Shown: positions 1,062 to 55,632 of the stretch, piece after piece | Numbering within the stretch: position 1 is the first letter of the stretch | Layout of the letters: every line of letters begins with the position of its first letter | Assembly: GCF_032062105.1 (NCBI RefSeq) | Contig: NW_026918424.1 | Span: 1-64,000, forward strand | Source of the DNA: Saccostrea cucullata | Lineage: Eukaryota | Direction of reading: 5' to 3' | DNA: 64,000 nucleotides | Program-made: the position numbers and the translations under genes | Notes under the pieces: model-generated | Databases searched by the model: none | What the model was told of the DNA's origin: nothing | Seen by the model: the letters and a program-made list of their open reading frames with translations, nothing else

Positions 1062-2565
1062 ATGAAATTAAAGTCTTCAAGTATAGTTTATCTGAAAGTT
1101 GTAGAAGGAATTATATGTTTCTTGTGGTTCATTTCTTCGAGGTGCAATGGATCCAGAACATCATATTTTAGGCTTGTACCGGAAACAAATCAGGAACCAA
1201 CAACAGGGATTTTAGAAGATTTCTGGAATTGTCCGAGTCTATTGTTGTGTAATACTCGTTGTCTCATCCACATTAATTGTAGGTCGTTTTTCTACAATCA
1301 TCTTCAGAAATAGTGTATTCTGACCGGGAATATGGACGCTCTATATAGCACTTCAACCGTCATATGGATTTTCTCATTACTTCATTGATCGTAAGTTTAT
1401 TTCAATAAAAGTAGAAGGGAGATTTTATTTTATGAACTTTTTTTTTCTAAGAAAACATTGAATTTTGCCTTTCCAGTAGAAAATGCATTTTTTTTTTACT
1501 TTTTGAGAATTGCAATTATAATATTCATAAACTATTGTTCCTAAGAAAGGTTTAGTCAATTTTCTTTTTACCAAAATTTCAACATTTCAAAAAGTTACAA
1601 ATGAGCAGTTTCAACCCCCGTCTTTGCGAAAGGTTTTCAATCAACTATCACGGTATATCATCATTCATCTCAAAAATATGTTGTGTGCTTCAAACTAAGA
1701 TTTTTTTATCTTCGATAAGAATACTAGTACTATAGTATTTATCATTATTTCGTTGAAACAATTGTTCTGATAAAGACGTCAGACATTTATTTAAAGATTC
1801 AGGATTCGGTGCCATTTTTTCCCAAATTCTTTATTAGCAAGCATGCAATAGATACTATATTGCAAGGGATCCATTAATTTCTTCTTCTGAAGAGAGCATT
1901 GGCCCCTGGTGTTACACAATGGATATAAACGTGAGATGGGAGTCAGGTGGCATCCCAGTCTGTTGTTAGTACTAAGATAATCTTTCATCTTTCTGAACGT
2001 TTTTAAAGACAGAAAATAACAGTCGACAATACAGCTCATTTTAATCATGAAAATCAATGTCCTAACTCCTAAAATCTCTTGAAACTTTGAGAGAGAAAAT
2101 CTGAGAAATGTTTTGATATCAAATTTTCTATTTTTGAACTGGAATTTTTTTCAATTAGAAATACCGTACCTTCAAAAAACCCCTCTGTTGTAAGAGCAAA
2201 ATATCAAGGATATACATCATGAGAACAGACTAGTTCTTGTGATCGAAGAACTGCGTATTAATATGTACTGGTAATAAATAATAAATGTTCATATATTCGT
2301 AAAAATGAAGACATGTTTTATTTTTTCAGACGATTTTACCCAAAACTGCAAAACAACACCCAAAGGAACTGATTACTATGGGAAAGCTAACACGACCAGT
2401 AAAGGAAATCCGTGCAACTATTGGTCAGACACATCCTATGGAACCAATGCCCACACATATCTTGATGATCAATTAAACTATTGTAGAAACCCTTTTGGGG
2501 AATTAGACTCCCCTTGGTGTTTTTCAGGGGCAAGTTGGGATTACTGCAGCGTACCATTTTGCTGA
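1062..2565 (+). pseudogene. Secreted PAN/apple-kringle (NK1-like) gene copy 1, disabled
   Basis: Exon 1 1062-1390 (signal peptide + PAN: CNTRC..CRSFFYN..CIL; donor C|GTAAGT). Exon 2 2330-2565 (acceptor TTTTTTCAG; 6-Cys kringle, NYCRNPF..PWC..WDYCSVPFC*); phase 1. In-frame TAG at 1311-1313 where copy 2 has AGG (Arg). A 4-nt insertion near 1340-1343 shifts the frame; removing it gives CILTGNMDAIALQPSYGFSHYFID, colinear with copy 2 CILTPAINVSTLRPSPGFLHFITT. Confidence 0.85.
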
Positions 2566-2612
2566 TAGTTACGACGTCAGAAACCAAGACAGGCCGGTGC
2601 CCTGCTATTATA

Positions 2613-4282
2613 CGAGGGACGTTCAATGAATAATGTCATTAGCTCGATTTCGTACAACATAGTAGTCATATAACATAAAGCTTGACTTTCTATCATTATT
2701 GAATCTTTATTGAATTTATAACAGTTTGGTTGACCACTTTTCATCGCATTATTTCATCGTGGGAAGCTGGAAAACAAGGGCTATTCGAGACACTGCATTA
2801 AAAATGAATGGTCAAGAATCAGTAAACTAGAGTAAAATTAAACGCTTCATTAAAGCAGCTGTAAAACTTGTTAATATCCCAAAAACATATTAACTGAAAT
2901 ATGTGAAATTTACAGCAACCAATGCCTGCTTTATAGACAGGTGAATATGTTGATTTCAATAAACAAAAATTATTTAATGGGCATCAAAAATGGGTACCGT
3001 CCTTCGCAACAATGACTTGCAACAACCGATGTAAATTTGCGAAATTTCAACAAATTATCACTGATTATGTTTTATTGACTTTAAGACACATAGCAAAATT
3101 GATAAAAATCATTTTGGGGATAGTTCATACTGTTTTAAAGAAACATTTTATAGTAAAAAGGTTAAATACTCAATGGTCACCCTATGTTTTGAAAAATGAG
3201 TGAAAACGACAGCGTGTCGGAATATCCAAACAATTATTTTTTAAGGAATTACTGTCTTATTTTTCGAATTCATGAAGTGATCAATGGATTGGCTTGTGTG
3301 ATAATTTGCATAAACGCCGAAGGCGTTTATGCATAAAATTATCACACAAGCCAATCCATTGATCATCTTCATGAATTCGAAAAATAAGACAGTTATTCCT
3401 TATATTTACATGCTTTGATTCCGCCAATCCACGGGCTCCAAGCCTGCTTCTCTCAAGGTGTTGTCCCGCCCTGCACGTGGGTTTTTTTGGAACCGCGCCA
3501 AGACATTCATGAGGAAATAAATTACATTTACAATTGGTAATTTTATCTCGGACAAAGACATTGGAAATGTAAATATAAAAAAATCAAAAGTTGTACTTAT
3601 CCATGTTTATATGAAATTCTAACAGATAATGAAACTTGAATTCATTTCACTTTAAGCCCTCAAAACAAATTTATAATAAAATGCACTTGACAAAACTGCA
3701 AAGGCCAAAGAAGAGCAAGAATTGCAAGAGCATAAAACAGTTTTATATGCTAGTTTCTTAAATATTAGCGGTCTTGTTCAAATTCATATTCGATGAGAAA
3801 GTTCAATTTCTGGAGGAGTCTAGAAAACAACTTTTTTGCAAAAAAATTGAAAGGTTTATGAGAGGAAGGAAACAGAATGAGGAATCCACTACATTAATTG
3901 TCTTCATGACGGCGTCCAAACCCACAGGCCATGAAGAGTAAAGGAGTTTTGGGGATAAACAGAAAGTTAATGTTTTGTCACACAAACAAAATTTGCCAGA
4001 TCTTTCAACCTTTGACCTGTTTCATTTCCTAAACTTAGAAAAACATCTATCAGAAAGAAAAAAAACAAGTACAGCAAATCATAGGATCTGCCATATTCCA
4101 GTATACGAAGGGTCATACTCAAAAATGTGTTCGAAAAACAATTGGAAAATGAATGAAAATGTTACGGATATGCGTTTTAATTGAAAGAGAATGTTTTAGT
4201 TTAATCACTAAGACTAAATCATAGAAAAGCGTTTTTTGTTTCTTTCCGAGCCCCAATGACATTATTTATTGAACGTCCCTCG
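2613..4282 (+). mobile_element. Decayed mariner (Tc1/mariner) transposon
   Basis: 28-bp TIR CGAGGGACGTTCAATGAATAATGTCATT / AATGACATTATTTATTGAACGTCCCTCG with TA on both sides. Broken transposase remnants resemble the mariner WVPHEL region (VHTVLKKH..RLNTQWSPYVL, ORF 3012-3203) and YSPDLAP region (LPDLSTFDLFHFLNLEKHL, ORF 3975-4184). Confidence 0.9.
3242..3578 (+). mobile_element. Hairpin-plus-tail element A, nested in the mariner
   Basis: Near-perfect palindrome 3242-3402 with CC-GAA-GG loop; 12-bp inverted repeat TTATATTTACAT (3400-3411) / ATGTAAATATAA (3567-3578). Confidence 0.75.
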
Positions 4283-5360
4283 TAAAAGTAGAACGTACAT
4301 ATTGTGGTGATACATGTACATGTGAGCGCGATAAATACATGTATGTAGAAATAAATTCAAAAGATGAAAGCCAACCAGCTAATTTTATCATTGGTGATCC
4401 TATATGGAACCCCAAAAAGTTGTATTGTGCTTGCATCTTCATCGTACAGTTTGCATGATGAATTTTGTATTATTTGTTGTTTTTGATCCATTTTGACGAG
4501 CTTTTTTAAAATAAGAATAATGAGTTGCTTTTAGTTATTTTTTATGAACAGTATATATACGTTCAGAACTGTGTGTTGTCCACCGGTGTAATATGAAATA
4601 ATTTTAATTCGGAAATCAAGGAGCAATATACGGTTTATTAGGTAAGATACATGTTTTTATTTTTCTACGCATTCAAAAAAATTTAATTAAGATATAGAAG
4701 CAGGTAATGAGCTGTGGTTAATCGCCCATCATTTTAGCGATAACCGAGTCCCCAAACACGCACTTATTTTGTCAATTTAAAGTTGAAAATGATCACTTGT
4801 CAATAAATTGTTCTGTTATTCACTTCATTATCAAATGTTGCTTGTAAAACTCAAGATACGTTGGAATGAATAGCAAACCCAGCAAGACTAAGACTAACAG
4901 TCTAAAAAGGTTAACCTTTTCATGTTGAAAATTATTGATAAACCTATCTAATTGTGGCTGCCTAGTCATAAATATTAAAGTAAAACTAACATAAACAACG
5001 TCATGGTAAGGATTTTTTCCGTTTCACCTCGTATAGTTGGAGTGTTCTTGGCTCAAACCTTTTTAGCTCACCTGAGCCGAAGTATACTTGGGCCGTTTCT
5101 TATCTTTGTTTCCCCTAACCCGACCCTAAATTCTCAAGTTGGGTTGGTATGTAAGTAAACAATTTTCTTCTGACAGCAGCTTTGAAAATACATTCGATTT
5201 AATGGAAAATTACCTTTATAATTAAGAAAAGTACAAAAGAAAGCGATTTGTGAACAAAATGCTAAGTATCATACATATACCGTTTAAAAGCAAAATTCAT
5301 GATTAATTAATTCACAACTGTTATTCAGTTGAACTTGTGAAATATCTCACGCCAGAGTAC

Positions 5361-6154
5361 TAGCTGCAATAATGTAGCCCTCTCCCTTTTTTTTTTTTTT
5401 TTTTTTGGGAGAGGGCTACAACTCCTTAGGATCTCCATAATGGTGCAGCTGCGGGAGTGATTTGCTCCCGCACGGATTTCGGCTCAAATTAACAGTAAAT
5501 GGCTATTTTATTAACATTTCTTACCTTGACTCCAAATAAGTAGTCATCCAAGACGTAAACCAATGCAAAAATATACAGAACGATCCCTATATCGCTTATT
5601 TTTCGTGTATGTCAACATCACAACTCGAATTTATCCGCCATGTTTACTGACCTTGATAGATTGTATTTTGGGACAGCCAATGAGAATTTAGGTTCTATAG
5701 GAGCGGATCTTTTTGGAATTCCCTTATTTTAAACATAAATATCGCTGCTTGCATAAAAATAACACTTAAAATGGTTTTATATACCTATGTTTTTGTGATG
5801 AAATTCAGCACATACACTTATAAACACCGATAATTGCTTTATTCAGTTGTTCTAAATTTCAAGCGAAAGTCTCATTACGTCACGCGTGGACTGTCATGGC
5901 TGCTGAAGTAAACTACCTGGAAACATGCAGAGTTATTTTACAAGTTTTTCGCATTTAACGGGGTCTACTGTTGACAGTGAATAAAAAATTCGTCTTATTA
6001 GAAGTAAGTTGAATGTAAAAATAATTTATTTTGCCTGCAGTCCCTCCTATTAAAAAAAAATATTTGCACCATTACGGAGATGCGATGGAATTGTAGCCCT
6101 CTCCAGAAAACATCAGATTAAAAAAAATCGGAGAGGGCTACATTATTGCAGCTA
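5361..6154. mobile_element. MITE with 10-bp TSD and hairpin-forming termini
   Basis: 25-bp TIR TAGCTGCAATAATGTAGCCCTCTCC / GGAGAGGGCTACATTATTGCAGCTA; direct repeat GCCAGAGTAC at 5351-5360 and 6155-6164; each end has its own internal inverted copy of TGTAGCCCTCTCC. Confidence 0.85.
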
Positions 6155-10702: not shown

Positions 10703-13700
10703 ATGGCTATTAATTCCAGCTATTTACGACCAGCCTTTATCTTTCAGTGTATGTGGTTGACACTTTTCGTAAGGACACAAAACGGGAATTTCCGTTCCTC
10801 ATTTTATAGTCGTGTACTGGAAGCAAACAATCTCGAACCGTCTAGTAACATTTTGGCAGACCATCATGCCTGTGACAGTTTGTCCGACTGCGCATCTATT
10901 TGTCTGAATAACATTCTTTGTCGTTCATTTTTCTACAATCCTGTACAAGAAAGGTGTATTCTGACTCCTGCGATCAATGTTTCTACACTACGACCTTCGC
11001 CGGGATTTTTACATTTCATCACCACTGGTGAGTACCTTTAAGGGACTCCGACCCTCAGCCAGGAAGGACAACTCTTTAATTTATAATTTAATTCAAAAAG
11101 TCTTTAAATGAAGCTTGAAATCTTTTAAATTTTTTCATGCAACAATTTTCATTATATGCCTCTCAATGTGTTTCGAGGTTCTTTGCAAAGCTCCATAAAT
11201 TACTTCTAATATCATATCATGTTAATAAATAGAGGATATCTATATTGTGTGATTTGATATTGGCTTTATCCAGCGAGTTGAAATGGTGTATATATTCGCG
11301 AGGCTTGCCGAGCGAATATACACCATTTCAACGAGTTGGATAAAGCCAATATCAAATCACACAATTATAGATGTTCTATTTATCTCATACGACTTTCGTT
11401 TTAACAAAACTTTGAGACTTCCCCTGCGAAACTACATGAATGACTGCCAAAATCAAATTGATGACGTATAACTTGATGACGTAGCACCGTTGATGTTTAC
11501 ATGCGTCGAGAGAAAGTAGATCGAGTTCAAAATTTAGAATATTTGCTATCTGTGTCTTTGGAAACATCATGTGAAAATTGCTGGAGCTTTACATCAAACG
11601 AACTTCTGACTGAAAGTTGTTAGGACTATGGGGATCGTGAAAATCAACTCTTTTTACGATGGCAGTACAAATCGTGCTAGGCAAGGCTAGGGGCCTAGAC
11701 TTTGTCTAGATTGTTTGCTGATCCATGGTAAGTTACACCTACATTACTAGGTAGTATAATATAAGAAAGCATTGCTAAAGATGTCAAAGGAGTCTTATAA
11801 CAACAACTTAACTGGTACATGTAGGCTTTACTTTCTCCGAAAACGATCTAAGGGGGGGGGGGGGGGGTAACATCTGTCTTCAAATAGCCAACGGGTTCCT
11901 TGATAAAATAAGACACTTCTTTGACATCTTGCTTTTAACGATATTGCTACCCTTTATCATTAATTTTATAAGGGCAACAATTTTCACAAATAAAAATTTC
12001 AATGAAATAAAATCTTGAAGCGAGGGTTCGTGTCAAAACCGGAAGTGCTATTGATAAAGCATCTACCCGTTGATAAAGCATAAGTTTATCCAACGGCCTG
12101 TATCACCAACACGTATGAGATAAACATTGGTATCTAAAAATGCTTTTTAGGGATAAAAATTTCTACTTTTAATTAGACCTTTCTGAGAAGTTTAAAGAAC
12201 GTTGAAGCACATTGAGAGGCATATAATGAAAATTGTTGCATGAAAAGATTTAATTTTCAAGCTTCATTTAAAGACTTTTTGAATTAAATTATGAATTAAA
12301 GAGTTGTCCTTCCTGGCTGAGGGTCGGAGTCCCTTAACTATGATTCTATACTTATATCTAAAGCTAAAAAAAAATCACGTATGTCTAACAGTTTGCCAAC
12401 TCGAATTAACAACTACAGTTCTAACTTAACCAAAATGAATATCTATTTCATCGTTTATTCTCGTGGTATCGTAACTCTTTGTGATTTATTCCTTCAAAGG
12501 TACAAAATCTTTACGTTTATATTATGTACAATATTATTATCAGGACATGAAAAGTTAGCAAGTATAAAACTAAATATCCATTTTTTCGTACTTTGATAAT
12601 GATTTATTTTCCTTTTCGGTAATTGAGCAATAAGTGCAACTCATATTTATGGCACGCCAAATTCACAAAAATGAGCTAAACATAGTTTCACAGTTGATAA
12701 ACTAGGTTTATCGACTGTAAACTATAGTTTACAAACCGTGAACTATAGTTAACAATTTGTTAACTATATTTTTCATCTGTAAAACTATATTTCACGGTTA
12801 AGTATAGTTTACGAATGCTTATCTAAGTTAATCTGTCTGTAATAAAACGTTAACAATAGATTTTGTTGATAAACATAGATTCACGTCTGTAAACTATCAT
12901 TTACAATCGTGAACTATAGTTTAGGAGTTGTTAATCATAGTTTCACAAATCGTGAAACTATATTTATCAGATCGTTAACTATAGTTAAGAGTTGTAAACC
13001 ATAGTTAACAAATCGTGAAACCGTATTTATCAGATAATCTATGTTTTGCAATCGCAAATGATTGTTTTTAGTATTAAGTATAGTTAACGGTTCTGAAACA
13101 TAGATTATCGCGTTAAGTATGGTTTACAGATGTAAGATATAGATTAACGTTGTTAACTATAGTTTACAGTCCGAAAACTATAGTTTACAACCGATAAACA
13201 TAGTTTATCGACTGTGAAACCATATTTAGCTCAATTTTTTAAAGAACGTGGGCGCTTTTGATTGGCATTCGGCAGGAATCTGGGCGTAATTGAAAAGTGA
13301 AAATTTTATCGACATGTCACATGAAATTTTAACATTTTTTTAATTTATCAGGAAAATATTTTCCCGAAATTGAGCTTTTATTTGTAAAAAAATAACTTAA
13401 AAATTGGCCAGATCAGACATTTGGTACAAAATGGTACATTTTTAAACACGTTTTTCTAAAATTTTTCTATCTCTGGGTCTTCTCTCCATGATTTTTAAAC
13501 GTTATTTGTGTGTATTTTAATTCAAAGAAACGAATGCACATTTTTAAAAAATGGAGAGAAGACCCGGAGACCACGAAAAATGAACTTTTCCCAAAAAAAA
13601 TCCAACTTTGTGAATGTGGTGCTTCTTTGTCCTTTTAAAATCAATTATTCACATGAAGCGGTGATAGCTCTGTAAGTTGGGCTACCTGTTCAGTGCACTC

Positions 13701-16700
13701 GAATTAAACAGTTTTTGGTTCGAGCCTTGCATGGGGCGTTAATTTTTTTTCATGCAAACAACCGTTTATTTTGTCAGTTTCGTTTTATGTACTGATGTAT
13801 TAAAATTTTGAATTAGATAAATTTTGGTTCAGTTTGGTTCTCGAGCGAAATCAATTCAAATCTTCTATTCTATAATGTACATGTACACGTATCGTGCATC
13901 TATGTCTTAAATATTTAGGTGTTTATTTTTTGTGAAACATTACTATGTTATAGTACCCCTAGGAAAAACGGACATAAATGTTACAATTTAATTCACAATG
14001 TCTCTCAAACTAAATGAAATAAAAAACTAAATGAAAAAAAACTTATGGACGTGTTGTAAAATCTGACCAGCTATGTTCAGCCAACCAAATCATGGACATT
14101 TAAACCATAAATGTTTCGTGCAAATGATTCCTGCAGATCACACGCCAAATGCGCCCATCTTCTTTGGCGTGTCATACATACTCATTGAAATTCTGCATAG
14201 ATAATGTGGAGAATGCCAATATGTCACTCTCCAGACTGTTCTTAATACGCATTTTTGCCTTTATCCATTAAATTGATTGATTGACTGTATGTTGTTTAAC
14301 GTCCATATCTCGAGAATATTTCACTCATACGGAAACGCCACCACTGAGGGCCATTGAGTAGTGAGGGATCTTTTTCGTGCCAGCGCCTACTGCGACACGG
14401 GACTCGGTTTATACGGAGTTTATACGGTCTAATCCGAAGGACCGTCTCTACGTCCCACAGTGGGATTCGAACCCGTAAGGATCAACTCCTTACCTCCCGA
14501 CTCTAGAGCAGACGCTCTAACCATTGCGCTACGCGGGCGACCCTTTTTCATTAGATGCCAGGCAACATCGCACAGGTTTAATTAAAAAGTGCTTATGAAC
14601 GCATGAAAATACCGAATTCTGACTGAAACAAGTAGAGTACATGTGGATGGCCTCGCATTTGTTAAGGTTAAAAGTCATCAAGCCGTCATTTTCCGATTCT
14701 TGCTATTACTAGAATTCAGTTTTCTTTGTTGCGCTGCCGTTGTCTTCCAAACTGCTGGTCTTTTATGCTACGGAGTTTTTTTCCCTGGCTGCTGATCGAA
14801 AGACGGATTTTTAACTTCACCTGCTCAAAGGATTACAATTCGGCCCTTTCATATATATTGTTTCTATAATACATTTTATATAAATAAAAAAACCAAATAT
14901 AATCTTTCCTTCAACAGCTATTAGCTATGTTCTGTTGTTCAGAACTGACTTTATCCAAAGCCCAATAAACCCTAAAATTCCGAGCGATGGACCTTTTACA
15001 TCAGGCGCTGATTTATCAAAAACATTGGTAGCCGAGGAATTCATTAAATTCCAAAGAGTTTAAATTAAGGAGTGTTCTCCATTTTAAAGAATTCCAAGGA
15101 ATCACTTTGTAAAGGCAGGAAAATATTTTTCGGGGTTAGAAGTTTGATAGGTATCGAACACAAAGGAATGGGCTTCTATCAAACATAACTGTACAGCGCA
15201 TGTTTGAATTTGAAAAACTTTCAGTATCATTCTTAATTTACTTGATCAAGATATACAGTGTACATATATTTGAACAAAGACAACTGTCTTCATTCCAGAT
15301 TGTATTCGGTCCAAGGCAGGCTGGAATTACAATGGGAATATCCATCAAACAAAGAGTGGGCGCCTGTGCCAGAGATGGGACCAACAGAGTCCGCATACCC
15401 ATAGCTACCAAGATCTCTCGGATCAACACAACTTCTGTAGAAATACACACTTAGATCGCGAAGAGGAGGAGGGTCCGTGGTGTTTTACAATGGATTCTGA
15501 CAAGAGATGGGAATCGTGTGGACTTCCGCCATGCTGTACGTTTGTTCACTTTGTTGTTTGTTGTTTGACGTCCCTCTCGAAAATTTTTCACTCATATGGA
15601 GACGCCACCACTTGCCACATCCTATACTCTTAGAGCAGGGAGTGATCTTTTTTGTGCCAGCACTTACTGCGACACGGGACCTCGGTTTATGAGATTTCAT
15701 CCGAAGTGGGATTCGTGACGTGAGGATCATATGAGGCGCCGTTTTTGTATTTACTGCCAAAAAGTGATATCACCTATTCGAATATCACTTATTTAAATAC
15801 AGTACGTGATATCACCTATTTGATTTGAATTGGCGATATCACCTATTCGATATGGTGATATCACTTATTCGATAAGTGATATCACCTATTCAAATTAAAT
15901 AGGCGACATCACTTATTTGAATATTTGATATCACCTATTCGACTAGGTGATATAACCTTTTCAAATTATTTATGAAATAACAACGGCTCTCAAGGCTATA
16001 GGTCTTTAAACTACCAAAAAGTGATATCACCTATTCGAGTACGTGATATTACCTTATCATTTTGAATAGAAGATATCGCTTATTCGAATAGGTGATATCA
16101 CCTATTCAAAATTATTTATGAAATAACAACGGCTCCCAAGTCTGTAGGTCTTTAAATCTCATTTACTTTCACTTTAGTTTTATAAGTCGTTGTTCTTGGA
16201 GACACTGGATTACACTTTGCATTTAGTTTTAAGCAAGTAGAACTTATAGTTTGTTTTACTCACAAATTAATCTTTCGTGTATACTACAAGAAAATGAAAA
16301 ATCGAGAAGAAAAATGCATGATGAATGTTCTATAGAGAAAATGCCTCCTTAAGGTTTATTGATACTCTGATAAGAGAGATAACTCTTAATGACATAATTG
16401 TCTATCATTCCTTTATAGATTTGTCGGGTTGAAGTGTCTTTTTTGTCCAATTTTGCCCAACAAGCTATGCTATAATTGTTTGTATTTTACTTATAAAATA
16501 CAGTTCTTTTGGAAAATCATTAAGGTTCAAGCAACATTTTATATGAGTGAGCAGAGGGTTTATGAACTTTAACATTATGAAGAGTGGAGAGGCATGCCAC
16601 TCTATTGTACCACAGCTGGGTAAAATTTACAAAATTTATATATTAACCTAACAGGAACGAATGAGATTTAATGTTCCCTCGCTTTTGCGAAAGTGGAGAA

Positions 16701-19156
16701 TTTAAAAAAAAAAACCGTTAATTTTTTTTCTTAAACTTGCACCATATGAACACAGTATAACTAAGGCGTGTTTCTCAGAACACGTAATTAAGAACCTAGT
16801 CTTCATATGAAATACTGTTTTTTTTTTCCTTGTCCATAATTTAGGTTAAGTATCTCAAAGTATCCAATCTCATTTGTTCGCTATATAAATATTTAATCGA
16901 ATCAGTAAAGCAGAATTAAAACAGAATGTAATATACAAGATTAGTCGTCTTTCCATTTGGCGAATCGTTCAGTACACTATCATGGTTTGAATAGCTAGAA
17001 ATCGCCTGGGATTTCTCTAAAAAAAAATTTAATTTGAGTTGAACGTAAAGTTTATCTATAATTAATCTCGTTTTAATACGTTTTAGCTCAAATACGCCAT
17101 ACAATATGCCTGGCTATCGTCAAAAGCGATCTTTATAAAAGAAAGTCAAATTTTCGTTTTTTCCCCTTCATTTTTAAGGGGGAGGGGGTATTCTGGCTAG
17201 GTTTAGTGTACAATGTGAATATTCTCTGATGAGCGAGAGTTTATATCTTATAAAACTTTTAAAACACTGAGAAAAGTCGAATCGAATAGTATTCTGAGTA
17301 TTATTTCCTGAATCAGATAGTAAGATCTGTATTTTAAAAAAAATTGTGTTAAATCACAGGAATTATTAGTTATAGGGGTTTCATATTTGTTTTCCTTGTG
17401 ACAAGACCTTCCCTTGGATATCAAGAAAAGCCATGACATAGGCATTTTCGCCTACTCTGGTAGTGATTTCAAAGTGTAATGTGTTTTATGTTTAATATTT
17501 CAATGTTAATAGTTCCCTCATATGATAAATATGAAAATTGTCCATTTTGTACTGAGTATATAGAAAATATTCAAGTATCCACCGAACGATGACAAACTGG
17601 GTGCGTTTCATTACCGCTACATTTTCAAAATTTTCATTACCGCTACATAGTCATTACCGCTACAAAAAACCTTACATTACCGATACATAAAAAAGTATGC
17701 ATTACCGCTACATTGCCTCTTTCGTTAGCCAGCCACATATGCGTGTACAGTACAACCTATAAATGCATAAGACCTGTTTCCCCTGCTCACCACGGGGAGG
17801 TGAAAGTAGGACTTTGAGCAGGATGTTTTTTTTCATTATTAAAATCAATTTTATTTCATAAAACACAAAAAATGAAAATCAAGCACTGTTCATAGATAAA
17901 GTCCTAAGTTTTGTCAAATGTTTTTTACACTATCGCTAAAGCCTTGAAAGCCATTTGCTTGACAACATATTGTTGGTTTCTAAATTTATAACCATCGATA
18001 AGTAAGCCGGCATTCCCTCAATTTGTAACAAATTTTACTTATCAGTTGTGGCTATATTGTTCAGATGAAGGTAAATAATTTTAAAATTTCGACTGCAGAG
18101 TTATTTATATAAATATACTCATTCTGATTAGATAGTGAGTGAATTCTGTTGATTAGAACTCATACACCGAACCATACCTTGCTAAATCGATATGTAGCGG
18201 TAATGAGTTGTTTTGGACTGATTCAATAGGTAGCGGTAATGAGTTGTTTTTGGCCGGGAAAATGTAGCGGTAATGATCGGTCGAAAATCTGAAAAAATAT
18301 AGCGGTAATGAGTTGAAATTTTTGGCAATGTAGCAGTAATGTTGACCTCCCGACAAACTGTTGCCAGAGACCACATTTAACCAGAAAAACAACTTTTGAA
18401 TTTTTTTTTTGGGGGGGGGGGGATATGACTGCACTTCTTTGCATTTAGATAGTTTTTTACAAAATAATGAAAATAAATGTTCAATTTTTCTTCTCATGCT
18501 CATAAAAACAGGTGATTTCCTTTTAAATTCTTGAGTCGGTTGTGTCCTCCGTTAGACTATATATGGATCTTTGACCTTGACCTATTAAAAAAATTTAACT
18601 TTGCCCATTACTTTTTAATAGATGATGCGAGGGCTGTTCTAGTTCCTAGTTCAAATGTATCTTGTGACAAGTCATGTTCCTGTGTATCTTGACCTTTGAC
18701 TTTGGCTTTTGATCCACTTTTATAAAACTTGGCCATAACTTTCGGATGGTTGGTTCTTGGACTTCAATACTTTACAAATATATCTATTGATACAAGCCCT
18801 TTCTTTGAAGGTTTTTTGATTTCTTGACTTTGTAGTTTCATTTGCATTTAAAAAAAGTTTCGCAATATGCTATCATACGGGGACATCGGTGTCTCACAAA
18901 CAACATTTTTTTCCTTTCAGATGATTTTTCCCGAAACTGCAAAACAACACAAAATGGAGCGGATTATTATGGGACGACAGATATGACCAAATCTGGAGAT
19001 CTGTGCAAGAACTGGTCAGATACAACCAATCAAAATCCCTCTTACACCTTTCTTTCGGATCATTTTAATTTTTGTCGGAACCCGTTCGGAAAAGAGAATG
19101 ATCCATGGTGTTATACAAGGACAAACTGGGACTATTGTAATATTACTCTGTGTTAA
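10703..19156 (+). CDS. Secreted PAN/apple-kringle protein (NK1-like), copy 2, 186 aa
   Basis: Exon 1 10703-11027 (signal peptide; PAN CASICLNNILCRSFFYNPVQERCIL; donor G|GTGAGT). Exon 2 18921-19156 (acceptor TTCCTTTCAG; complete 6-Cys kringle ending CNITLC*). Phase-1 join, 561 nt in frame; paralogous to copy 1 in both exons. Confidence 0.85.
11042..12333. mobile_element. TTAA-inserting MITE with long TIRs (Kolobok-like)
   Basis: TTAA at 11038-11041 and 12334-12337; TIR GGGACTCCGACCCTCAGCCAGGAAGGACAACTCTTTAAT... longer than 80 bp; lies 14 nt downstream of the copy-2 splice donor. Confidence 0.85.
11225..12124 (+). mobile_element. Hairpin-plus-tail element B, nested in the TTAA MITE
   Basis: Palindrome about 11225-11383; 13-bp inverted repeat TTTATCTCATACG (11379-11391) / CGTATGAGATAAA (12112-12124). 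Confidence 0.75.
12673..13232. repeat. Inverted-repeat element built from about 20-bp palindromic AAACTATAGTTT-type units
   Basis: GAGCTAAACATAGTTTCACAG... / ...CTGTGAAACCATATTTAGCTC ends; many AACTATAGTT palindromes inside. Confidence 0.7.
14273..14542 (-). mobile_element. tRNA-derived SINE
   Basis: Minus strand has an A-box (TAGCGCAATGG), a B-box (GGTTCGAATCC), the core AAGATCCCTCACTACTCAATGGCCC and a (CAAT)n tail; same family as 23991-24240. Confidence 0.8.
15547..15730 (-). mobile_element. Truncated SINE of the same family
   Basis: TTTGACGTCCCTCTCGAAAATTTTTCACTCATATGGAGACGCCACCAC and GATCTTTTTTGTGCCAGCAC match the 14273 and 23991 copies. Confidence 0.7.
15755..16160. repeat. Array of about 21-bp palindromic GTGATATCACCTATTCGA units with an internal duplication
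   Basis: Repeated GATATCACCTATTC; AAATTATTTATGAAATAACAACGGCTC..TAGGTCTTTAAA occurs twice (about 15963 and 16109). Confidence 0.75.
17599..18351. mobile_element. MITE with GGG/CCC ends, 8-bp TSD and subterminal CATTACCGCTACA arrays (Merlin-like)
   Basis: GACAAACT at 17591-17598 and 18352-18359; about five CATTACCGCTACA motifs at the left end and about five inverted TGTAGCGGTAATG at the right end. Confidence 0.8.
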
Positions 19157-19740
19157 AAGGGCACTTCTTTTAAAGACATACAATATGAACTAGAATGGAA
19201 TGCTGGAGGAGAAAGGATTACGATTACAAATATTGAAAAATAGACCTATATATCAATATGCAAATTGTATGTAATTAAGTGAAATAGAAAATGTAATCAA
19301 TTGAAGAAATTTAAGCATGATATTCAAAATACTTCGAATGTCATTAAACGGGGCAAAAAAGGCCACTAAGGGAACATTGTTCATTGAAGAGTATTTATAC
19401 AGTGTATCTACTCAATTATATCGTTTTTTTTTTTAAATAAAGTCGTTTTCATTGTACTTTCTGTATTCATCTAGGGGTTTGTGCCACAGTGCTTTCCAAA
19501 TGCAGATATACGAGTAATATTCTCTACAAATTTCTAAGATTAATAATGATTAAATCAAGCTACTTTAAATAAATATTATTGACAATCAAATAGCTCCAAA
19601 CCAAAACTCTCAAAACTTGCATCCCAAGAGATAACATAATTCATTAAAGTTTGTTTATTGTGCAAATGAATGCATCTTCCGTACCTGTGAAGAATTATAC
19701 TGAACCTCAACACTACGCATAAAGTAAGGGGATTTTCAAA

Positions 19741-22700
19741 ATGACGACCAAGATGCCATTAATTTCTTTCCCTTTCGTTGTCGTCATCGTAGTCTTTAAA
19801 TCGTACGGATCTCATTTCAGAGATGATTTTTTTCATCGTCTGCCCAAGGCAGACGAAAAAGTTCTCATGAAAAAAGTTCTAGCGGAGTTCACCGGTGTGT
19901 CTGTTCGTCAGTGTGGCTTGAAGTGCTTGGAACACTACCTGTGTTCGTCTTTCTTCATCAACAGAGGGAATAAACACTGTAAACTCGCAGGAGAGGTCGA
20001 CTTTCAAAATCTTGTCCAATCGCCTGGTTACAGGTACTATGTGTCTGACGGTAAGGCTTTAATTTTTGCATGTTGCTTTGTCAGATTAAGGCTATACGCT
20101 CCTCAGCCATGAACGATAACTCTTATCATCATTATTTTCTTCAGTTTGACTCAAATTGAAGCTTAAAATTATTTTTTATTGTGCAACAATTTTTATTTCA
20201 CGAAACTCGATAGGATTCGGGGTCAAATCAATTTCACAGTTTGATAAGTACAAAAAAACTCAGCGAATGAAATATTTAATTATAACATTGCAAATGGTTT
20301 GCATAATGTGGCAAACATCTATGATGTCAACTTAGAGCTCTTTTCTCGATAAAGTCACAATGCACAGAGGGGTGATTTTTACATCAAGTATGTTTATAGC
20401 ATTATTTACAGATTCAGATGTAAGGTATATGCTAGAAATTAATTTTCCATAACTTTTTTCTGAAGTCCATTTCCATCCATGGATTTTTGGCGAAGTTTAT
20501 AAGCAATACATTTTATCTCGTGTACTGAATAACTTTCAAGTCTTTTGAACCTTTAAGTCCTACCCATAACCGCCCCGTACTATCTAAACTCAATCCACAA
20601 GGCTGATATAGTCCACAGTTGTCCACACACATCAGGAACTGCCCATTCTGATCTAAGATGTGTAGGCAGTCATTATTTTCATCTGCCACTATGATTTGCC
20701 TCATAGAATCTGTTGCAATATGTAAAGGATCAAGTGATTTTCTTCTTTTAGCTGGTGAACCGTCATATCGAAATCGAACTCTCCCAGATTTGTCCGCCAC
20801 AACCACATTTCTAGCATTACTGTCAGACACACAAATATCACCATTTCCATTTTCAGCTACATAATTTATATATGCCCCTATGCTAAGGATCGGCATGCCA
20901 TCCTCATCTTTATTAATTTCATATTTTACTGCTCCTTCTTGATATCGGACAACTTTCTGGAGACAATTGTCATAAGACATACTGACCAAGATATCTCCTG
21001 ACATGGTACAACACAGTCCCCATGGACACCAGCCATTTGGAAGGGCGATAAGTGTCTCTGTCTTCCCATGTCTGACTATGTTCACAGTTTCATTATCGGA
21101 GTCGCAGTATATCAGTTCTCCTTGTATTGTCACTGAGATATCCTTAAATCGGCCTGTGCCTCTGACAATGACAGAGTCCACTTCAGATCCATTTATGTTA
21201 AGTCGCTTTATGATTCTCTTCTGACCACTAACCCAAGCTTCATCTGCTCCTAAACAAGCTACACTGTATGTAGGCTTGTCACTAGTCGGAATGGTAGCAA
21301 CAACTTTGGCTTTTTTAAGCAGCTCTTTGCTGGAAGAATATGACGTTTCACCTGTCAGATGAGATCGTGACTGCTGTGTTAATATAGCCTTGTATTCTCC
21401 TAAGTCTATGCTGAGTTCTCTCCCTTGGACTGTTTTTGTATTTAGTGAAGGAATGTTGACATCCTCAAAATCAGCAGGTATGTTTCTGTATTTTTCCAGT
21501 TTGGATTTGTGGCAGATGATTTCGGACACCCTGTTTGCCTTCAGAATTTCGTTGGTTTGTTTAACTGTATGGACCACATCTGGAATAAGGTTATTTAGCT
21601 TAGTCTGGTAAGATTCTATATGAGTGAGATAATTTTCTCTCATGGATTTGATCAAGGAACCCAGTTTGTTAAAGATAGTGTCGACTTCTTGGTGCCATAG
21701 TTGTCTGTGTTTTTCTGTTTCCTTTTCCAGTTCATCAAATTTAGCTTTTATTTTAGATATTTTTCCCTCTGTATCCTTTAACTTCTTCTCGTACTTGGGA
21801 ATAATAGTTGATTCAGTTTCTTTGATTTCATTTTCAATTTCCGTTTTCTTTTTATTGAAAATCTCTTGCATTTCCACAATTTTGTGCCCACTATGAGAAC
21901 TTAGAATACATTTCAGACACACATGGACATCACATTCTTGACAATGAGCCTCACATCTCTGACTGGAGTGAAACTTACACTCAGGAAACACCAGTTGTAT
22001 CTTTCTTTTGGTGAAATGAACAATGTCATGTGTTTGAGACTTGAACTTGTCTACGTGTTTACCGACGCAGTCCACACATAAACTCACTTGACAGTTATTA
22101 CAAAATTGCTGAGTAGGCTTAGGACAAAGGTCACAAGTGATAATCTCCTGTGCCCAAGAAGTTGAAGTAGCCATTGTCTGCCTCAGGAAGTGGAACTAAA
22201 ATTATATGTTAAAAAAATCAATATTTAACAACAACATATAGGGGTAATATATTTAAGAAATGTATTTGAAACACGGCATGATTATTACTTCAAGGTTTTT
22301 AATATTCATTTACTTTATATGAAATTCTTCTGTCAAGACATACTCAAATGATTTCATGGTCAGTGTTGCACAGTATGAATTTGATAGACAGCTGTTTGCC
22401 AATTCAAGTTCTAAAAACATTTATTCATTTAAAAGAATCCCCTTTTCCAAATTTTTTCACATAGAACTTAATTAGACATTTAAAAAAAAAAAAAATAACA
22501 TTAAATTTTGTCTGCTGTGTAATCCACACATAAGTTAAAAAGGCATGGACAACATTTGCCTTGTCGTTTTGCTTTGCAGTCTTGCTTTTCTCAATGATAA
22601 AGGATACGAGGGGTTATCAAAAAGTTCGTGGACTAGCGTCATAAAATTAAAACCGCTTTAGGCATATTATTGAATTTTAAAATATTTAGTTAGCATCATC

Positions 22701-28700: not shown

Positions 28701-30690
28701 TCTCTTGATTATATGGCAATTTAATTCTTAATGCAGCGAAAAATAATTCACTTTTAAGCACTGGTACTTTGTTTCCATTGTTACACTGCAAAGTAGCAAT
28801 TATACCCAATTTTTCTTATGGTTTTGGTGATGCAAGATCCTAAGGATGCATATTTGCCAGTCTTGAATTTTGATGTTTTTCCTCAAGACAGTAGCATTAA
28901 CCCAATCTTAGATACTGGTTTTGCATGGTTACACTGTGTTACAATGGCAACCATAAAAGTTATTTATAGAATAATATTCCTTATACTTATATACTTAAGG
29001 TCAAACATTTTTATTGTTTTTCTTAAGTCGTTGATTGAGTTTGAGCAAGAAACACCTACCATTAGTGAATACGGAGTGTTTTTCAGCATATTTCAGCATT
29101 TTAAATGTATTCCAAATGTACCCTTGGTTACCACTTACTTAGAGATATATTCTAAACAGTTTCTTTACAGTATAAGTGACATCAAGGTGTCATGTTTCTG
29201 TGAGAATGGTTTGTTTGCTTTTTTCTAGTTTTTATTAAGCCACAGTCAAGTGGCTGAAAATCTCGATTTTTCAAACTTTTCCGGCTGTTGCCATAGCAAC
29301 CGAGACACTTAGCAACGATATTTTGTTTGACATTTGTTTCTGGTGTCAAGTACTAAACTTGGGTGAAGTTTCATCAAAATCGGTGACCATGCGTGGCAAC
29401 GAAGTTCAAGTGGTTACAGAGAATGGCTATTAACATGATCTAATTATCTAGGGGACATAAATATGCCACCATATAAGCCATATTTCAAAATTTGAAGTTT
29501 TCCTTGAAAGATACCTTTCCATAGGTATCCATCATAATCTTCCTAATTCATAATACAACATATTGTTCGGGTACATAATTTCACAACCAATTTCACACCT
29601 AAGGCTTTCTTACAAAAGTTACTATGATTTCTTTTTCAACATCTTTGGCCTTGTGAAAAACCCCGTATTTCAGCGTGTTTAAACGTACTGAAAAACTCAT
29701 CTGGAAGATAAAACTCTTCTCTCTGCACTTACCTGTCTTCTATAAAGCATTTTATTATTAAATTATAAAATTTAAGTAAGTTCTCGTTTCAGACTGTAAG
29801 CGGAGTATGCTGGGATGGGAGTACACAGGCACAAGGGATAGGACTGTGGACGGGGTACTCTGTCAGCGCTGGGATCAACAATATCCCAATGAACACACTT
29901 ACGAGCACCTCTCAAGTGAGCACAACTATTGCAGAAACCCTGCTAAAGCATACGCTAAAGGCCCGTGGTGCTATACGACAAAGGGAGACAAACCCTGGAA
30001 TTACTGTTTTGTTCCAAAATGCGGTATGTTTCCTACACTAAGGTTACTAGGTAGTTTGGCTGGTGAGATTAACATCTTTCTTTTCAGTCGAGAAGCATCA
30101 GTTTTCAAGTTTTTTTCTCTGGCTGCCCCCCTCCCCCCACTTTCAAAAACAATGCTACATCACTGCCTTAAGTTGCATTTGCAATCTCTACAAAGTGTAT
30201 GAGAAAAATCCAGCAAAATCCAAAGATTTTTAAGACAGAGAAAAAACAATGGAATCTAAAACGGCCATTAATCCAAAAGAATTATCTTTTTTAAAAACCC
30301 TTTCAGACACCCCTTGAACATCACAATATAATATAGGATGTACAATATGCATTGCTGTAATAAGCATAAGAAAGTTTAGTTGACAATTGCAATTTTTACA
30401 GTACAGTAATGAGTTATTTATATTAAATTTATTATCTTCTTACAGTGACTGCACCACGAGAGTGTCTAACAGCAGAGAGAGGAGCAGACTACTTTGGTAC
30501 AGTGAACTTCACCGCCACGGGGATAGAGTGTCAGAGGTGGGGGGATAAGTACCCCCGGGACCATGACTACACCATTCTCAAGCAGGAAGAAAACTACTGC
30601 AGAAATCCCTTTGGAGAAAAGAAAGGTCCCTGGTGTTACACAGTGTGGGGACGATATGAATTTGATTATTGTAAAATTCCAAAATGTTAA
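19741..30690 (+). CDS. Secreted PAN/apple-kringle-kringle protein (NK2-like), copy 3, 261 aa
   Basis: Exon 1 19741-20050 (signal peptide; PAN CGLKCLEHYLCSSFF..HCKL; donor G|GTAAGG). Exon 2 29793-30023 (kringle 1, NYCRNPA..GPWCYT; donor G|GTATGT). Exon 3 30446-30690 (kringle 2, NYCRNPF..GPWCYT..CKIPKC*). All introns phase 1; 786 nt in frame; AATAAA at 30780. Confidence 0.82.
20513..22174 (-). CDS. RING-less TRIM-like protein: B-box1, B-box2, coiled coil, NHL repeats (553 aa), nested antisense in intron 1 of copy 3
   Basis: Single coding exon; CDLC..FCNNCQVSLCVDCVGKH and CKFH..HCQECDVHVCLKC..HSGH B-boxes; heptad-rich middle; NHL-type repeats (PWGLCCT..GDILVS, PLHIATDS..IIVAD, PCGLSLDSTGRLWVG). 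Acceptor 21 nt upstream of the ATG (exon starts at 22195); likely 5'UTR exon donor AAG|GTAAAG at 23149. Confidence 0.92.
   Translation of the reverse strand: MATSTSWAQEIITCDLCPKPTQQFCNNCQVSLCVDCVGKHVDKFKSQTHDIVHFTKRKIQLVFPECKFHSSQRCEAHCQECDVHVCLKCILSSHSGHKIVEMQEIFNKKKTEIENEIKETESTIIPKYEKKLKDTEGKISKIKAKFDELEKETEKHRQLWHQEVDTIFNKLGSLIKSMRENYLTHIESYQTKLNNLIPDVVHTVKQTNEILKANRVSEIICHKSKLEKYRNIPADFEDVNIPSLNTKTVQGRELSIDLGEYKAILTQQSRSHLTGETSYSSSKELLKKAKVVATIPTSDKPTYSVACLGADEAWVSGQKRIIKRLNINGSEVDSVIVRGTGRFKDISVTIQGELIYCDSDNETVNIVRHGKTETLIALPNGWCPWGLCCTMSGDILVSMSYDNCLQKVVRYQEGAVKYEINKDEDGMPILSIGAYINYVAENGNGDICVSDSNARNVVVADKSGRVRFRYDGSPAKRRKSLDPLHIATDSMRQIIVADENNDCLHILDQNGQFLMCVDNCGLYQPCGLSLDSTGRLWVGLKGSKDLKVIQYTR
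22901..23089. repeat. Palindromic repeat segment, inverted near-identical copy of 27448-27636
   Basis: About 190 bp matches the reverse complement of 27448-27636 with only a few mismatches; built from GTTGACATGCAAGTTA units. Confidence 0.85.
23211..23264 (-). promoter_or_regulatory. Putative TRIM promoter with ISRE/IRF-like and NRF1-like motifs
   Basis: ACTTTCGGTTT at 23212-23222 (minus strand AAACCGAAAGT); TGCGCATGTGCA at 23253-23264; both lie just upstream of the predicted UTR-exon donor at 23149. Confidence 0.5.
23298..26144. mobile_element. Non-autonomous CAC-ended DNA transposon with 5-bp TSD (Transib-superfamily-like)
   Basis: About 50-bp TIRs beginning CACACTGCTCAAC; GTTAT at 23293-23297 and 26145-26149; subterminal GTTATCGGA/TCCGATAAC repeats; no transposase ORF recognised. 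Confidence 0.8.
23991..24240 (+). mobile_element. tRNA-derived SINE nested in the CAC-ended element
   Basis: A-box TGGCGCAGTGATT, B-box GGTTCGTATCC, core AAGATCCCTCACTGCTCAATGGCCC, tail AAACAACATACAATCAA. Confidence 0.8.
27424..29472. mobile_element. Palindromic GTTGACATGCAA-unit MITE, left end missing, interrupted by a TTAA element
   Basis: Right end GGGGACATAAATATGCCACCATA matches the intact family member at 39242-39389. Confidence 0.6.
27703..29429. mobile_element. TTAA-flanked TIR element rich in GTTGCCATGGCAAC-like palindromes
   Basis: TIR AGCCATTCTCTGTAA / TTACAGAGAATGGCT with TTAA on both sides; GTTGCCATAGCAAC at 29287 and many degenerate copies. Confidence 0.8.

Positions 30691-50546: not shown

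Positions 50547-55632
<5,086 letters not shown>

What the first reader, a model, noticed from the sequence alone, without database searches (positions are those of the whole stretch)
1062..30690. Tandem cluster of standalone NK1/NK2-like secreted proteins (PAN + kringle, no protease)
Seen: three paralogues with signal-PAN-kringle (two copies) or signal-PAN-kringle-kringle, each stopping exactly at the last kringle Cys; no serine-protease exon is present. Established: PAN + K1 and PAN + K1 + K2 are the architectures of the HGF splice variants NK1 and NK2, which act on MET; vertebrate HGF/plasminogen kringles are each split over two exons. Here each module is one exon joined by phase-1 introns. 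Inference: either an invertebrate growth-factor-like ligand family or an independently exon-shuffled lectin/immune family undergoing birth and death.
Basis: partly seen in the sequence, partly recalled or inferred. Interest (0 to 1): 0.75.

Follow-up and report, generated by a model that had tools for sequence, protein, structure and literature searches.

The report
Oyster secreted PAN–kringle–kringle gene cluster
Three neighbouring oyster genes (one of them dead) encode small secreted proteins built like the front end of plasminogen or of the growth factor HGF but with no protease part, so they are probably binding proteins whose partner is still unknown.

Summary
All three + strand genes have the same plan of three exons: signal peptide plus PAN, kringle 1, kringle 2. 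All introns are phase 1, and a stop codon follows the last kringle Cys. Gene 1 is a pseudogene: it has an in-frame TAG, a frameshift and a half-deleted kringle 1. No protease exon lies downstream.

The window is Saccostrea cucullata. RefSeq already names the locus "plasminogen-like" but fuses genes 2 and 3 into one 530-aa model. Orthologues in four other oyster species are separate proteins of 256-265 aa.

Gene 2 (acidic, type A) and gene 3 (basic, type B) are old paralogues. Their PAN exon type also heads at least 12 PAN plus C-type-lectin genes in this genome. Their kringles fall outside the vertebrate plasminogen/HGF/MSP kringle clade. I therefore read them as NK2-like in layout but not as HGF orthologues.

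The most likely role is a non-catalytic secreted binding protein. A role as ligand for the oyster's Met-family receptor, which I found elsewhere in the genome, stays open. The scan had noted kringle receptor families elsewhere in this genome, but not this family.

The parts
1062..1390 (+). Gene 1 (pseudogene), exon 1: signal peptide + PAN. It is broken by TAG at 1311-1313 and by a 4-nt insertion that shifts the frame. The donor GTAAGT at 1391 is kept.
   Evidence: 1 TAG inside the match; DNA alignment with gene 2
1885..1964 (+). Gene 1, remnant of the kringle 1 exon. Only the 3' part is left (...GPWCYTMDINVRWESGGIPVC). The 5' part of about 155 nt is missing. The donor GTTAGT is kept.
   Evidence: profile positions 55-79 only; 90.5 % to the K1 exon of L001
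2330..2565 (+). Gene 1, exon 3: kringle 2. The frame is open, all six Cys are present, and TGA follows directly after the last Cys.
   Evidence: (47.7 bits)
10703..11027 (+). Gene 2 (type A, acidic), exon 1: signal peptide + PAN (5 Cys). Phase-1 donor GTGAGT.
   Evidence: PAN_1 31.1 bits; RefSeq XP_062603252.1 residues 1-108, 100 %
15299..15535 (+). Gene 2, exon 2: kringle 1 (237 nt, phase 1-1).
   Evidence: 61.7 bits; contig break at 15298; joint 15535->18921
18921..19156 (+). Gene 2, exon 3: kringle 2 and TAA directly after the last Cys. AATAAA lies at 19436.
   Evidence: (an X1 contig reads on to 19165, past the stop)
19150..19724 (+). GT..AG interval that the RefSeq model treats as an intron to fuse gene 2 to gene 3. 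It removes gene 2's last kringle Cys and its stop. I take it to be intergenic sequence (3' UTR of gene 2 and 5' flank of gene 3).
   Evidence: mapping of P0068; an X1 contig runs unspliced over 19396-19829
19741..20050 (+). Gene 3 (type B, basic), exon 1: signal peptide + PAN (4 Cys). Phase-1 donor GTAAGG.
   Evidence: 88 % to S. echinata XP_061173941.1
29793..30023 (+). Gene 3, exon 2: kringle 1 (231 nt, phase 1-1). It follows a 9.7-kb intron that holds a B-box/NHL gene on the other strand.
   Evidence: (59.7 bits)
30446..30690 (+). Gene 3, exon 3: kringle 2 and TAA directly after the last Cys. AATAAA lies at 30780.
   Evidence: (69.0 bits)

Best explanation
The region holds a tandem array of three paralogous three-exon genes for secreted proteins of about 260 aa. 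Each protein is a signal peptide, one PAN/apple domain and two kringles, and nothing else. Gene 1 is a pseudogene. Gene 2 (type A, acidic) and gene 3 (type B, basic) are intact and have separate orthologues across oysters. They are not proteases, and they are not splice forms of a protease gene. The family looks assembled from modules that circulate in bivalve genomes. One module is a signal+PAN first exon, which also heads many PAN plus C-type-lectin genes. The other is an 'inner kringle + terminal kringle' pair, which also ends other bivalve proteins that start with EGF or PAN. Shown: the anatomy, the pseudogene, conservation, absence of a protease exon, and modular kinship. Inferred: the proteins act outside the cell as non-catalytic binding or bridging proteins. 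They would use the PAN domain and kringle pockets that lack the acidic pair of the plasminogen-type lysine site. The partner would be a glycan, matrix or cell-surface molecule that is not yet known. They resemble HGF NK2 in layout without being HGF orthologues.
For: The splice 15535->18921 and the exon start at 15299 come. RefSeq XP_062603252.1 maps at 100 % to the six exons of genes 2 and 3. Seven of 8 oyster orthologues end at the last kringle Cys as single units of 159-265 aa, and one has one further residue. Transcript-sized Logan contigs of 907-1035 nt encode whole 260-aa proteins. There is no protease: (0 of 96 frames). Of 15 fetched paralogous loci that contain the PAN exon, 12 go on to C-type-lectin exons, 1 goes on to a kringle, 1 is cut by its contig end and 1 shows nothing. 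In the kringle tree, all 21 vertebrate PLG/HGF/MSP kringles form one clade (97/90) that holds no oyster kringle. The A and B K1 form a clade (95/89). The A and B K2 group together (97/75) and sit, with only weak support (62/87), among the last kringles of other bivalve proteins. The PAN profile matches apicomplexan MIC4 apple domains best in the PDB (1.3e-7), ahead of plasminogen (0.12) and HGF (0.41). The CRN...PWC loops read NTHLDREEEEG, NPAKAYAKG and NPFGxxxx, where plasminogen kringles have NPD.D (alignment). Birth and death rests.
Against: Both types are kept as orthologues from Saccostrea to Magallana and Ostrea. K1 is 67-69 % identical. That fits a conserved specific partner better than a fast-turning immune repertoire. 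The PAN tree's placement of oyster A/B PANs with PAN-lectin PANs is weak (71/85). An AU test does not reject a tree that unites all kringle-linked PANs, vertebrate ones included (p 0.489). The three-domain order is collinear with plasminogen/HGF/MSP at 99.9 % profile probability. No binding, tissue or induction data exist for these genes. Expression in the three raw-read RNA runs was close to nil (depth 0-3). The lysine-site argument rests on a motif that I recalled, not on a structure.
Confidence: 0.55

Rival explanations
1. The proteins are real growth-factor-like ligands. They would be gene-encoded counterparts of HGF NK2 that bind the Sema domain of a lophotrochozoan Met-family receptor tyrosine kinase, possibly as an acidic/basic A-B pair, and so would be the missing ligands of protostome Met.
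For: The layout is collinear with NK2. Both types are conserved across oysters, K1 most of all. Type B is basic (pI 8.4-8.9) and type A acidic (5.1-5.8) in every species looked at, using signal cleavage points that I guessed. A and B lie side by side here, and they lie on the same chromosome-sized contig in S. echinata and in C. angulata. This genome has a signal-Sema-PSI-TIG-TM-tyrosine-kinase gene on C11080. Met RTKs are reported in a mollusc and an annelid, and no ligand for them was named in the passages I read (PMC6374515, passages read). The annelid Capitella also has a protease-less PAN-K-K protein. C. elegans SVH-1/SVH-2 is a protostome precedent (abstracts in the listing; PMC6337849 passages).
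Against: The kringles lie outside the vertebrate PLG/HGF/MSP clade. According to PMC6337849 (passages read), HGF and MSP appear only in vertebrates and no growth-factor orthologue was found in lower chordates. The PAN alone shows no special affinity to the HGF N domain. The Sema exon of the C11080 receptor is much nearer to plexin A (1e-34) than to MET (3e-12), so it may be the Met-LP type, for which semaphorin ligands were proposed (PMC6374515). SVH-1 keeps a protease domain. No binding data exist.
Confidence: 0.2
2. Genes 2 and 3 are one gene, as in RefSeq XP_062603252.1 (530 aa): a PAN-K-K-PAN-K-K protein made by removing 19150-19724.
For: The interval has GT..AG ends and keeps the frame. 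An automatic annotation chose it.
Against: The splice removes the last Cys of a kringle and places a second signal peptide in mid-chain. All orthologues in S. echinata, M. gigas, C. angulata and O. edulis are single units. AATAAA follows gene 2's stop at 19436. In run X1 one contig reads through the would-be donor to 19165 and another runs unspliced over 19396-19829. The joint is not among the 15 listed joints, though 25 more were not shown.
Confidence: 0.07
3. The genes are decaying leftovers of plasminogen-like protease genes that lost their protease exons, and they have no function of their own.
For: Gene 1 is clearly decaying. Expression was very low in three RNA runs.
Against: Genes 2 and 3 have open frames with all Cys kept. 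They have orthologues of the same length in four other oyster species with 54-92 % identity per domain. The stop directly after the last Cys is shared by 7 of 8 orthologues and by Mytilus and Capitella PAN-kringle proteins.
Confidence: 0.05

Closest known systems
HGF/SF splice variant NK2 (and NK1)
   Same: Signal peptide, one PAN (N) domain with the C-x3-C...C-x11-C core, then two kringles in the same order with short linkers, and an end just after kringle 2. The profile alignment is collinear. Foldseek hits NK2 entries 4iua, 3hn4 and 3sp8 at E of about 1e-13 to 1e-11.
   Different: Here the short form is the whole gene, not a splice variant of a gene with four kringles and a protease-like domain. 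Each kringle is one exon; the two-exon split in vertebrates is recalled, not tested here. The kringles lie outside the vertebrate clade. The PAN loop between the second and third Cys is two residues shorter (listing). MET binding is untested.
Plasminogen (the name RefSeq gives these proteins)
   Same: The PAN-K1-K2 order matches. Plasminogen is the best sequence match in the PDB (4a5t, E 3.8e-66 for the O. edulis orthologue, with PAp+K1 aligned collinearly).
   Different: There is no serine-protease domain. There are two kringles rather than five. The NPD.D acidic pair of the lysine-binding kringles is absent.
Oyster PAN + C-type-lectin secreted proteins (unnamed family in this genome)
   Same: The first exon is of the same type (signal + PAN, 25-46 % identity) and ends in a phase-1 donor. 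There are 37 such exons in the genome at E <= 0.001.
   Different: The downstream modules are three C-type-lectin exons instead of two kringle exons.
Other protease-less PAN-kringle proteins of Lophotrochozoa (M. gigas 339 aa with three kringles; Mytilus 'plasminogen' 342/394 aa with EGF; Capitella teleta CAPTEDRAFT_223208, 324 aa)
   Same: They are secreted, have PAN then kringles, and end at the last kringle Cys. The last kringles of the bivalve members group loosely (62/87) with the K2 of the window genes.
   Different: They differ in kringle number and have extra EGF modules. The two Capitella kringles are each other's nearest relatives, so that duplication was independent.
C. elegans SVH-1 (HGF/plasminogen-like) with the Met-like receptor SVH-2
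   Same: It is a protostome kringle protein that acts as a growth factor on a Met-like RTK (abstracts in the listing; PMC6337849 passages).
   Different: SVH-1 has a protease domain and protease-dependent functions. I made no sequence comparison with it here.

Membership tests
Kringle (Pfam PF00051) | Domain of about 78 aa with six Cys and the CRN...PWC core, scoring over the Pfam cut-off | tested here: met
   Five intact kringle exons score 47.7-69.0 bits against a cut-off of 34.3. Each has six Cys. Gene 1's K1 is only a fragment.
PAN/apple (Pfam PF00024) | PAN_1 match over the cut-off, and the four-Cys core | tested here: inconclusive
   Gene 2 scores 31.1 bits, over the 21.4 cut-off. Gene 1 (16.8) and gene 3 (18.6) are under it. 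The family profile hits MIC4 apple domains at 1.3e-7. The four-Cys core aligns with plasminogen/HGF PAN. The PAN part of the model has pLDDT of about 66-84 and aligns within whole-chain Foldseek hits.
HGF NK1/NK2 | Collinear PAN-K1(-K2) layout | tested here: met
   hhalign gives 99.9 % over 201 columns. Foldseek aligns to NK2 structures. All three genes are of NK2 type; none is of NK1 type.
HGF NK1/NK2 | Splice variant of a gene that also encodes K3, K4 and a serine-protease-like domain | tested here: not met
   There is a genomic stop after K2. None of 96 downstream frames hits Trypsin and there are no catalytic motifs. Orthologues are 256-265 aa.
HGF NK1/NK2 | Orthology to the HGF/MSP lineage | tested here: not met
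   The 21 vertebrate kringles form a clade (97/90) without any oyster kringle. The PAN tree is unresolved (AU p 0.489). According to PMC6337849 (passages read), HGF and MSP first appear in vertebrates.
HGF NK1/NK2 | Binds and activates or antagonises MET | not testable with these tools
   A candidate Met-family receptor gene exists on C11080. No tool for predicting complexes was available.
Plasminogen | C-terminal trypsin-like protease domain | tested here: not met
Plasminogen | Lysine-binding kringle with the acidic pair in CRNPD.D (the definition of the motif is recalled) | tested here: not met
   The loops read NTHLDREEEEG, NPAKAYAKG, NPFGELDS, NPFGKEND and NPFGEKKG, against NPDND and NPDAD in plasminogen kringles (alignment). 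This is a sequence reading only.
Oyster PAN + C-type-lectin family | C-type-lectin domain after the PAN exon | tested here: not met
   The window genes carry kringles instead. Only the PAN exon type is shared.

The most novel reading that the evidence does not exclude
Type A (acidic) and type B (basic) PAN-K-K proteins, encoded side by side, work together as the natural ligand of the lophotrochozoan Met-family receptor tyrosine kinases. Those receptors were found in molluscs and annelids in 2019, and I found no ligand named for them in the passages I read. If this is right, signalling from a PAN-kringle ligand to a Sema-domain kinase is older than vertebrates, and its ligand did not need a protease-like chain.
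Probability: 0.15. Interest if true: 0.85.

Novelty: new variant of a known kind. Interest (0 to 1): 0.5.

Why it matters
In vertebrates the PAN-kringle layout is known from plasminogen and from the MET/RON ligands HGF and MSP, and the short NK1/NK2 forms exist only as splice products. Oysters, and by my database hits also mussels and an annelid, encode protease-less PAN-kringle proteins as whole genes. Oysters keep two charge-opposite types next to each other.

This gives concrete, small and easily expressed candidates to test against the Met and Met-LP receptors of molluscs. It also bears on how the plasminogen/HGF module set was assembled.

On the practical side, it shows that the RefSeq model for this locus fuses two genes and that the name 'plasminogen' used in bivalve transcriptome papers is misleading, because there is no protease.

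Tried and rejected
The spliced step was left out. I never joined the window's exons into a protein. All searches used single exons by reference, or natural database proteins.

RNA evidence. The single read-laying run (window 14900-20400; runs X16-X18 and X1) gave only thin support. Depth over the exons was 0-3 in the raw-read runs. The deep bins (15452-15819, 16188-16739, 17292-18579) are repeats, covered by reads that are mostly 90-95 % alike. Gene 1, the 3' end of gene 3 and the exon 1 to exon 2 joints lay outside the stretch and stayed unchecked.

Structure. AlphaFold2 on S. echinata P0060 with a 24-row alignment was poor (mean pLDDT 59.6, pTM 0.44). I use it only for the domain-order match, not for pockets or interfaces.

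PAN alone against the PDB gave nothing significant for genes 2 and 3.

The PAN tree could not decide between common descent with plasminogen/HGF and kinship with the PAN-lectin genes.

Paralogue survey. Five of the 20 loci I fetched (L003, L015, L017, L018, L020; minus-strand hits) were cut to 10 kb in a way that left the PAN exon out, so they are not in the count of 15. L015 and L017 still show C-type-lectin exons.

Met search. Pfam Sema found 10 exon matches, and no listed kinase match lay on the contigs that hold them (only 132 of 899 kinase candidates were scored). The receptor on C11080 was found through TIG plus kinase on one contig. Its Sema exon is missed by Pfam but hits plexin and MET in the PDB. 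I did not settle whether it is Met or Met-LP, nor whether the TIG+kinase gene on C10075 has a Sema domain, because that contig starts too close to the gene.

Literature. Six searches found no paper on this oyster family. 'Plasminogen(-like)' appears only as a name in lists of differentially expressed genes (PMC9498863, PMC11171025 and PMC6697025, passages read), and I could not tie those entries to these genes. Additional files of PMC6337849 (domain figures S2 and S3) and the sequence lists of PMC6374515 may bear on the invertebrate PLG-like and Met claims.

The claim that vertebrate kringles are split over two exons is recalled and was not tested.

Full report
WHAT IS THERE

The window is contig C561 of a 1.17-Gb oyster assembly. 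The RefSeq protein XP_062603252.1, 'plasminogen-like [Saccostrea cucullata]' (P0068, 530 aa), maps at 100 % identity to six pieces of the window, so the species is S. cucullata. Earlier notes of the scan had given that name as a lead.

A profile scan of both strands of the whole window finds three PAN exons and six kringle pieces, all on the + strand. The PAN exons are at 1155-1310, 10787-11023 and 19813-20049. The kringle pieces are at 1889-1963, 2347-2562, 15301-15534, 18938-19153, 29795-30022 and 30463-30687.

Read together with the sequence, these form three genes with one plan. Exon 1 carries the signal peptide and PAN. Exon 2 is kringle 1. Exon 3 is kringle 2 followed at once by a stop.

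- Gene 2: 10703-11027, 15299-15535, 18921-19156.
- Gene 3: 19741-20050, 29793-30023, 30446-30690.
- Every intron is phase 1 with GT..AG ends, and the two inner exons (237 and 231 nt) are multiples of three.

CORRECTIONS TO THE OBSERVATION

Its kringle 1 exon is real for four reasons:
- It scores 61.7 bits against Pfam Kringle.
- It is part of the RefSeq model.
- An RNA contig of run X1 breaks exactly at 15298.
- The joint 15535->18921 (GT..AG) is seen in one read each of X16 and X17 and in one X1 contig.

Gene 1 (1062-2565) is a pseudogene. Its PAN exon has TAG at 1311-1313 where gene 2 has AGG, and a 4-nt insertion then shifts the frame. Only the 3' part of its kringle 1 exon is left (about 1885-1964). 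Its kringle 2 frame is still open.

Another contig (C19426, L002) is 88 % identical to window 53-1881 over 1,860 nt and has an intact PAN exon. C14906 (L001) has an intact PAN and K1 of the same subtype. These are either recent paralogues or very divergent haplotypes. Either way this subtype is turning over.

NO PROTEASE

No His or Ser catalytic motif occurs in any frame of the window. None of the 96 + strand open frames of at least 38 aa in 2487-10594, 19305-19569 and 30527-40024 hits Trypsin or any credible family. AATAAA follows the stops at 19436 and 30780.

ONE GENE OR TWO

RefSeq joins gene 2 to gene 3 through a GT..AG interval, 19150-19724. That splice deletes gene 2's last kringle Cys and its stop, reads five codons of gene 3's leader, and leaves a signal peptide in mid-protein.

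Against this model:
- Every orthologue is a single unit: S. echinata XP_061173941.1 (258 aa, type B) and XP_061174781.1 (159 aa, K1-K2 of type A); M. gigas XP_011430183.3 (256 aa); C. angulata (257 aa type B and 265 aa type A); O. edulis XP_048768186.2 (265 aa).
- Logan contigs of 907-1035 nt encode whole 260-aa proteins.
- In X1 one contig reads past the would-be donor to 19165, and another runs unspliced over 19396-19829.

I take the fusion to be an annotation artefact or a minor read-through form (about 7 %).

FAMILY STRUCTURE

Type A (genes 1 and 2, O. edulis P0005, C. angulata P0088) and type B (gene 3, P0060, P0069, P0070, P0061) each form starred clades for K1 and for K2 that include several oyster genera. 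The A/B split is therefore older than those genera.

Identity of gene 3's exons to other species:
- S. echinata: 88 %, 89 % and 79 %.
- M. gigas: 55 %, 69 % and 54 %.

Identity of gene 2:
- S. echinata: K1 86 % and K2 75 %.
- O. edulis: 46 %, 67 % and 59 %.

K1 is the best-kept module. With signal cleavage points that I guessed, type A is acidic (pI 5.1-5.8) and type B basic (8.4-8.9) in all six proteins computed. A and B sit on the same chromosome-sized contig in S. echinata and in C. angulata.

WHERE THE MODULES COME FROM

The genome holds at least 150 kringle exons (150 of 228 candidates were scored). It holds 37 PAN exons like gene 2's at E <= 0.001.

Of the 15 fetched paralogous loci that contain the PAN exon:
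- 12 continue into C-type-lectin exons;
- 1 continues into a kringle;
- 1 is cut by its contig end;
- 1 shows nothing within 8 kb.

The 1.84-billion-protein library search with gene 2's PAN exon gave 56 hits. These include PAN plus Lectin_C proteins and the O. edulis PAN-K-K protein.

A profile of these PAN exons matches Toxoplasma MIC4 apple domains best in the PDB (1.3e-7). Plasminogen scores 0.12 and HGF 0.41.

In the kringle tree (75 kringles) all 21 vertebrate plasminogen/HGF/MSP kringles form one clade (97/90) without any oyster kringle. The K2 of both oyster types sits, with weak support (62/87), among the last kringles of other bivalve proteins that start with EGF or PAN.

The PAN tree places oyster A/B PANs with the PAN-lectin PANs, and places vertebrate and Capitella PANs apart. 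Support is modest (71/85 and 94/85). An AU test does not reject uniting all kringle-linked PANs (p 0.489).

At the level of the whole chain the oyster proteins align collinearly with vertebrate PAN-K1-K2 (99.9 %, E 4.6e-37). PAN alone reaches only 43.8 % over 31 columns.

So the layout equals NK2, the kringles are not orthologous one-to-one with vertebrate kringles, and the origin of the PAN is open.

Protease-less PAN-kringle proteins that end at the last kringle Cys also exist in M. gigas (three kringles), in Mytilus (with EGF) and in Capitella (PAN_1 41.4 bits plus two kringles).

HOW IT PROBABLY WORKS

Shown: secreted, non-catalytic, three disulfide-rich binding modules, conserved.

Inferred: the proteins bind something outside the cell. 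The kringle loops lack the NPD.D acidic pair seen in plasminogen kringles (the meaning of the motif is recalled). Plasminogen-type lysine binding is therefore unlikely.

The kinship of the PAN exon with lectin genes, the apple-domain matches to galactose-binding microneme proteins (that property is recalled) and the copy turnover all lean towards a soluble recognition or bridging protein (0.55).

The alternative is a growth-factor-like ligand (0.2). The genome has a gene for signal-Sema-PSI-TIG-TM-tyrosine kinase on C11080. PMC6374515 (passages read) reports Met and Met-LP kinases in a mollusc and an annelid, and the passages I read name no ligand for them. The Sema exon found here is closer to plexin A than to MET, so it may be the Met-LP type.

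KNOWN OR NEW

The sequences are public under automatic names. I found no paper that describes the family. PMC6337849 (passages read) places the origin of HGF and MSP in vertebrates. I file this as a new variant of a known kind: gene-encoded, protease-less PAN-K-K proteins.

Noticed in passing
window 20513-22174 (- strand): An intronless 553-aa ORF with two B-box zinc fingers, a coiled-coil stretch and an NHL repeat (TRIM-like without a RING hit) lies on the opposite strand inside the 9.7-kb first intron of gene 3.
   Followed up: partly
window 10703-30690: RefSeq XP_062603252.1 (530 aa) fuses two neighbouring genes through 19150-19724. The model loses a kringle Cys and carries an internal signal peptide.
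   Followed up: yes
window 15452-15819, 16188-16739, 17292-18579: Interspersed repeats in gene 2's second intron draw hundreds of RNA reads, mostly 90-95 % alike and with loose ends, so they are transcribed from many other places. One starts about 20 nt after the kringle 1 exon.
   Followed up: no
G000:C11080:157600-171100 (L021, L022; - strand): This is a Met-family receptor gene. It has a 395-aa first coding exon with signal peptide and Sema domain (PDB: plexin A 1e-34, MET 3e-12; missed by Pfam Sema), then PSI, TIG, a TM exon and tyrosine-kinase exons. A coding-looking minisatellite of about 3 kb lies in one intron (L021 6513-9620).
   Followed up: partly
G000:C128:495064-496515 (+): A kringle and a full tyrosine-kinase domain lie in one 505-aa open frame, which looks like a Ror/MuSK-type receptor exon.
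   Followed up: no
window 35211-35909 (- strand): An ORF of 233 aa made of leucine-rich repeats (LRR_8, 73.7 bits) lies just downstream of the cluster.
   Followed up: no
window 55609-57962 (+): Two exons of a TRM5/TYW2-type tRNA methyltransferase (TYW2_N_2 28 bits; TRM5-TYW2_MTfase 51 bits).
   Followed up: no
window 62915-63555 (+): Two short Cys-rich ORFs, the second with a hydrophobic tail. The first gives a weak, sub-threshold hit to the Quiver u-PAR/Ly-6 family (20.5 bits, cut-off 27.3), so this may be a GPI-anchored three-finger protein gene.
   Followed up: no
L004-L019 (paralogous loci of G000): In 8 of the 13 aligned PAN exons from the PAN-lectin group of loci (12 PAN plus C-type-lectin loci and L007), the third core Cys of PAN is replaced by Ser or Thr, and a new Cys follows the fourth (…KKCVC…). 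This suggests a re-wired disulfide in that subfamily.
   Followed up: no
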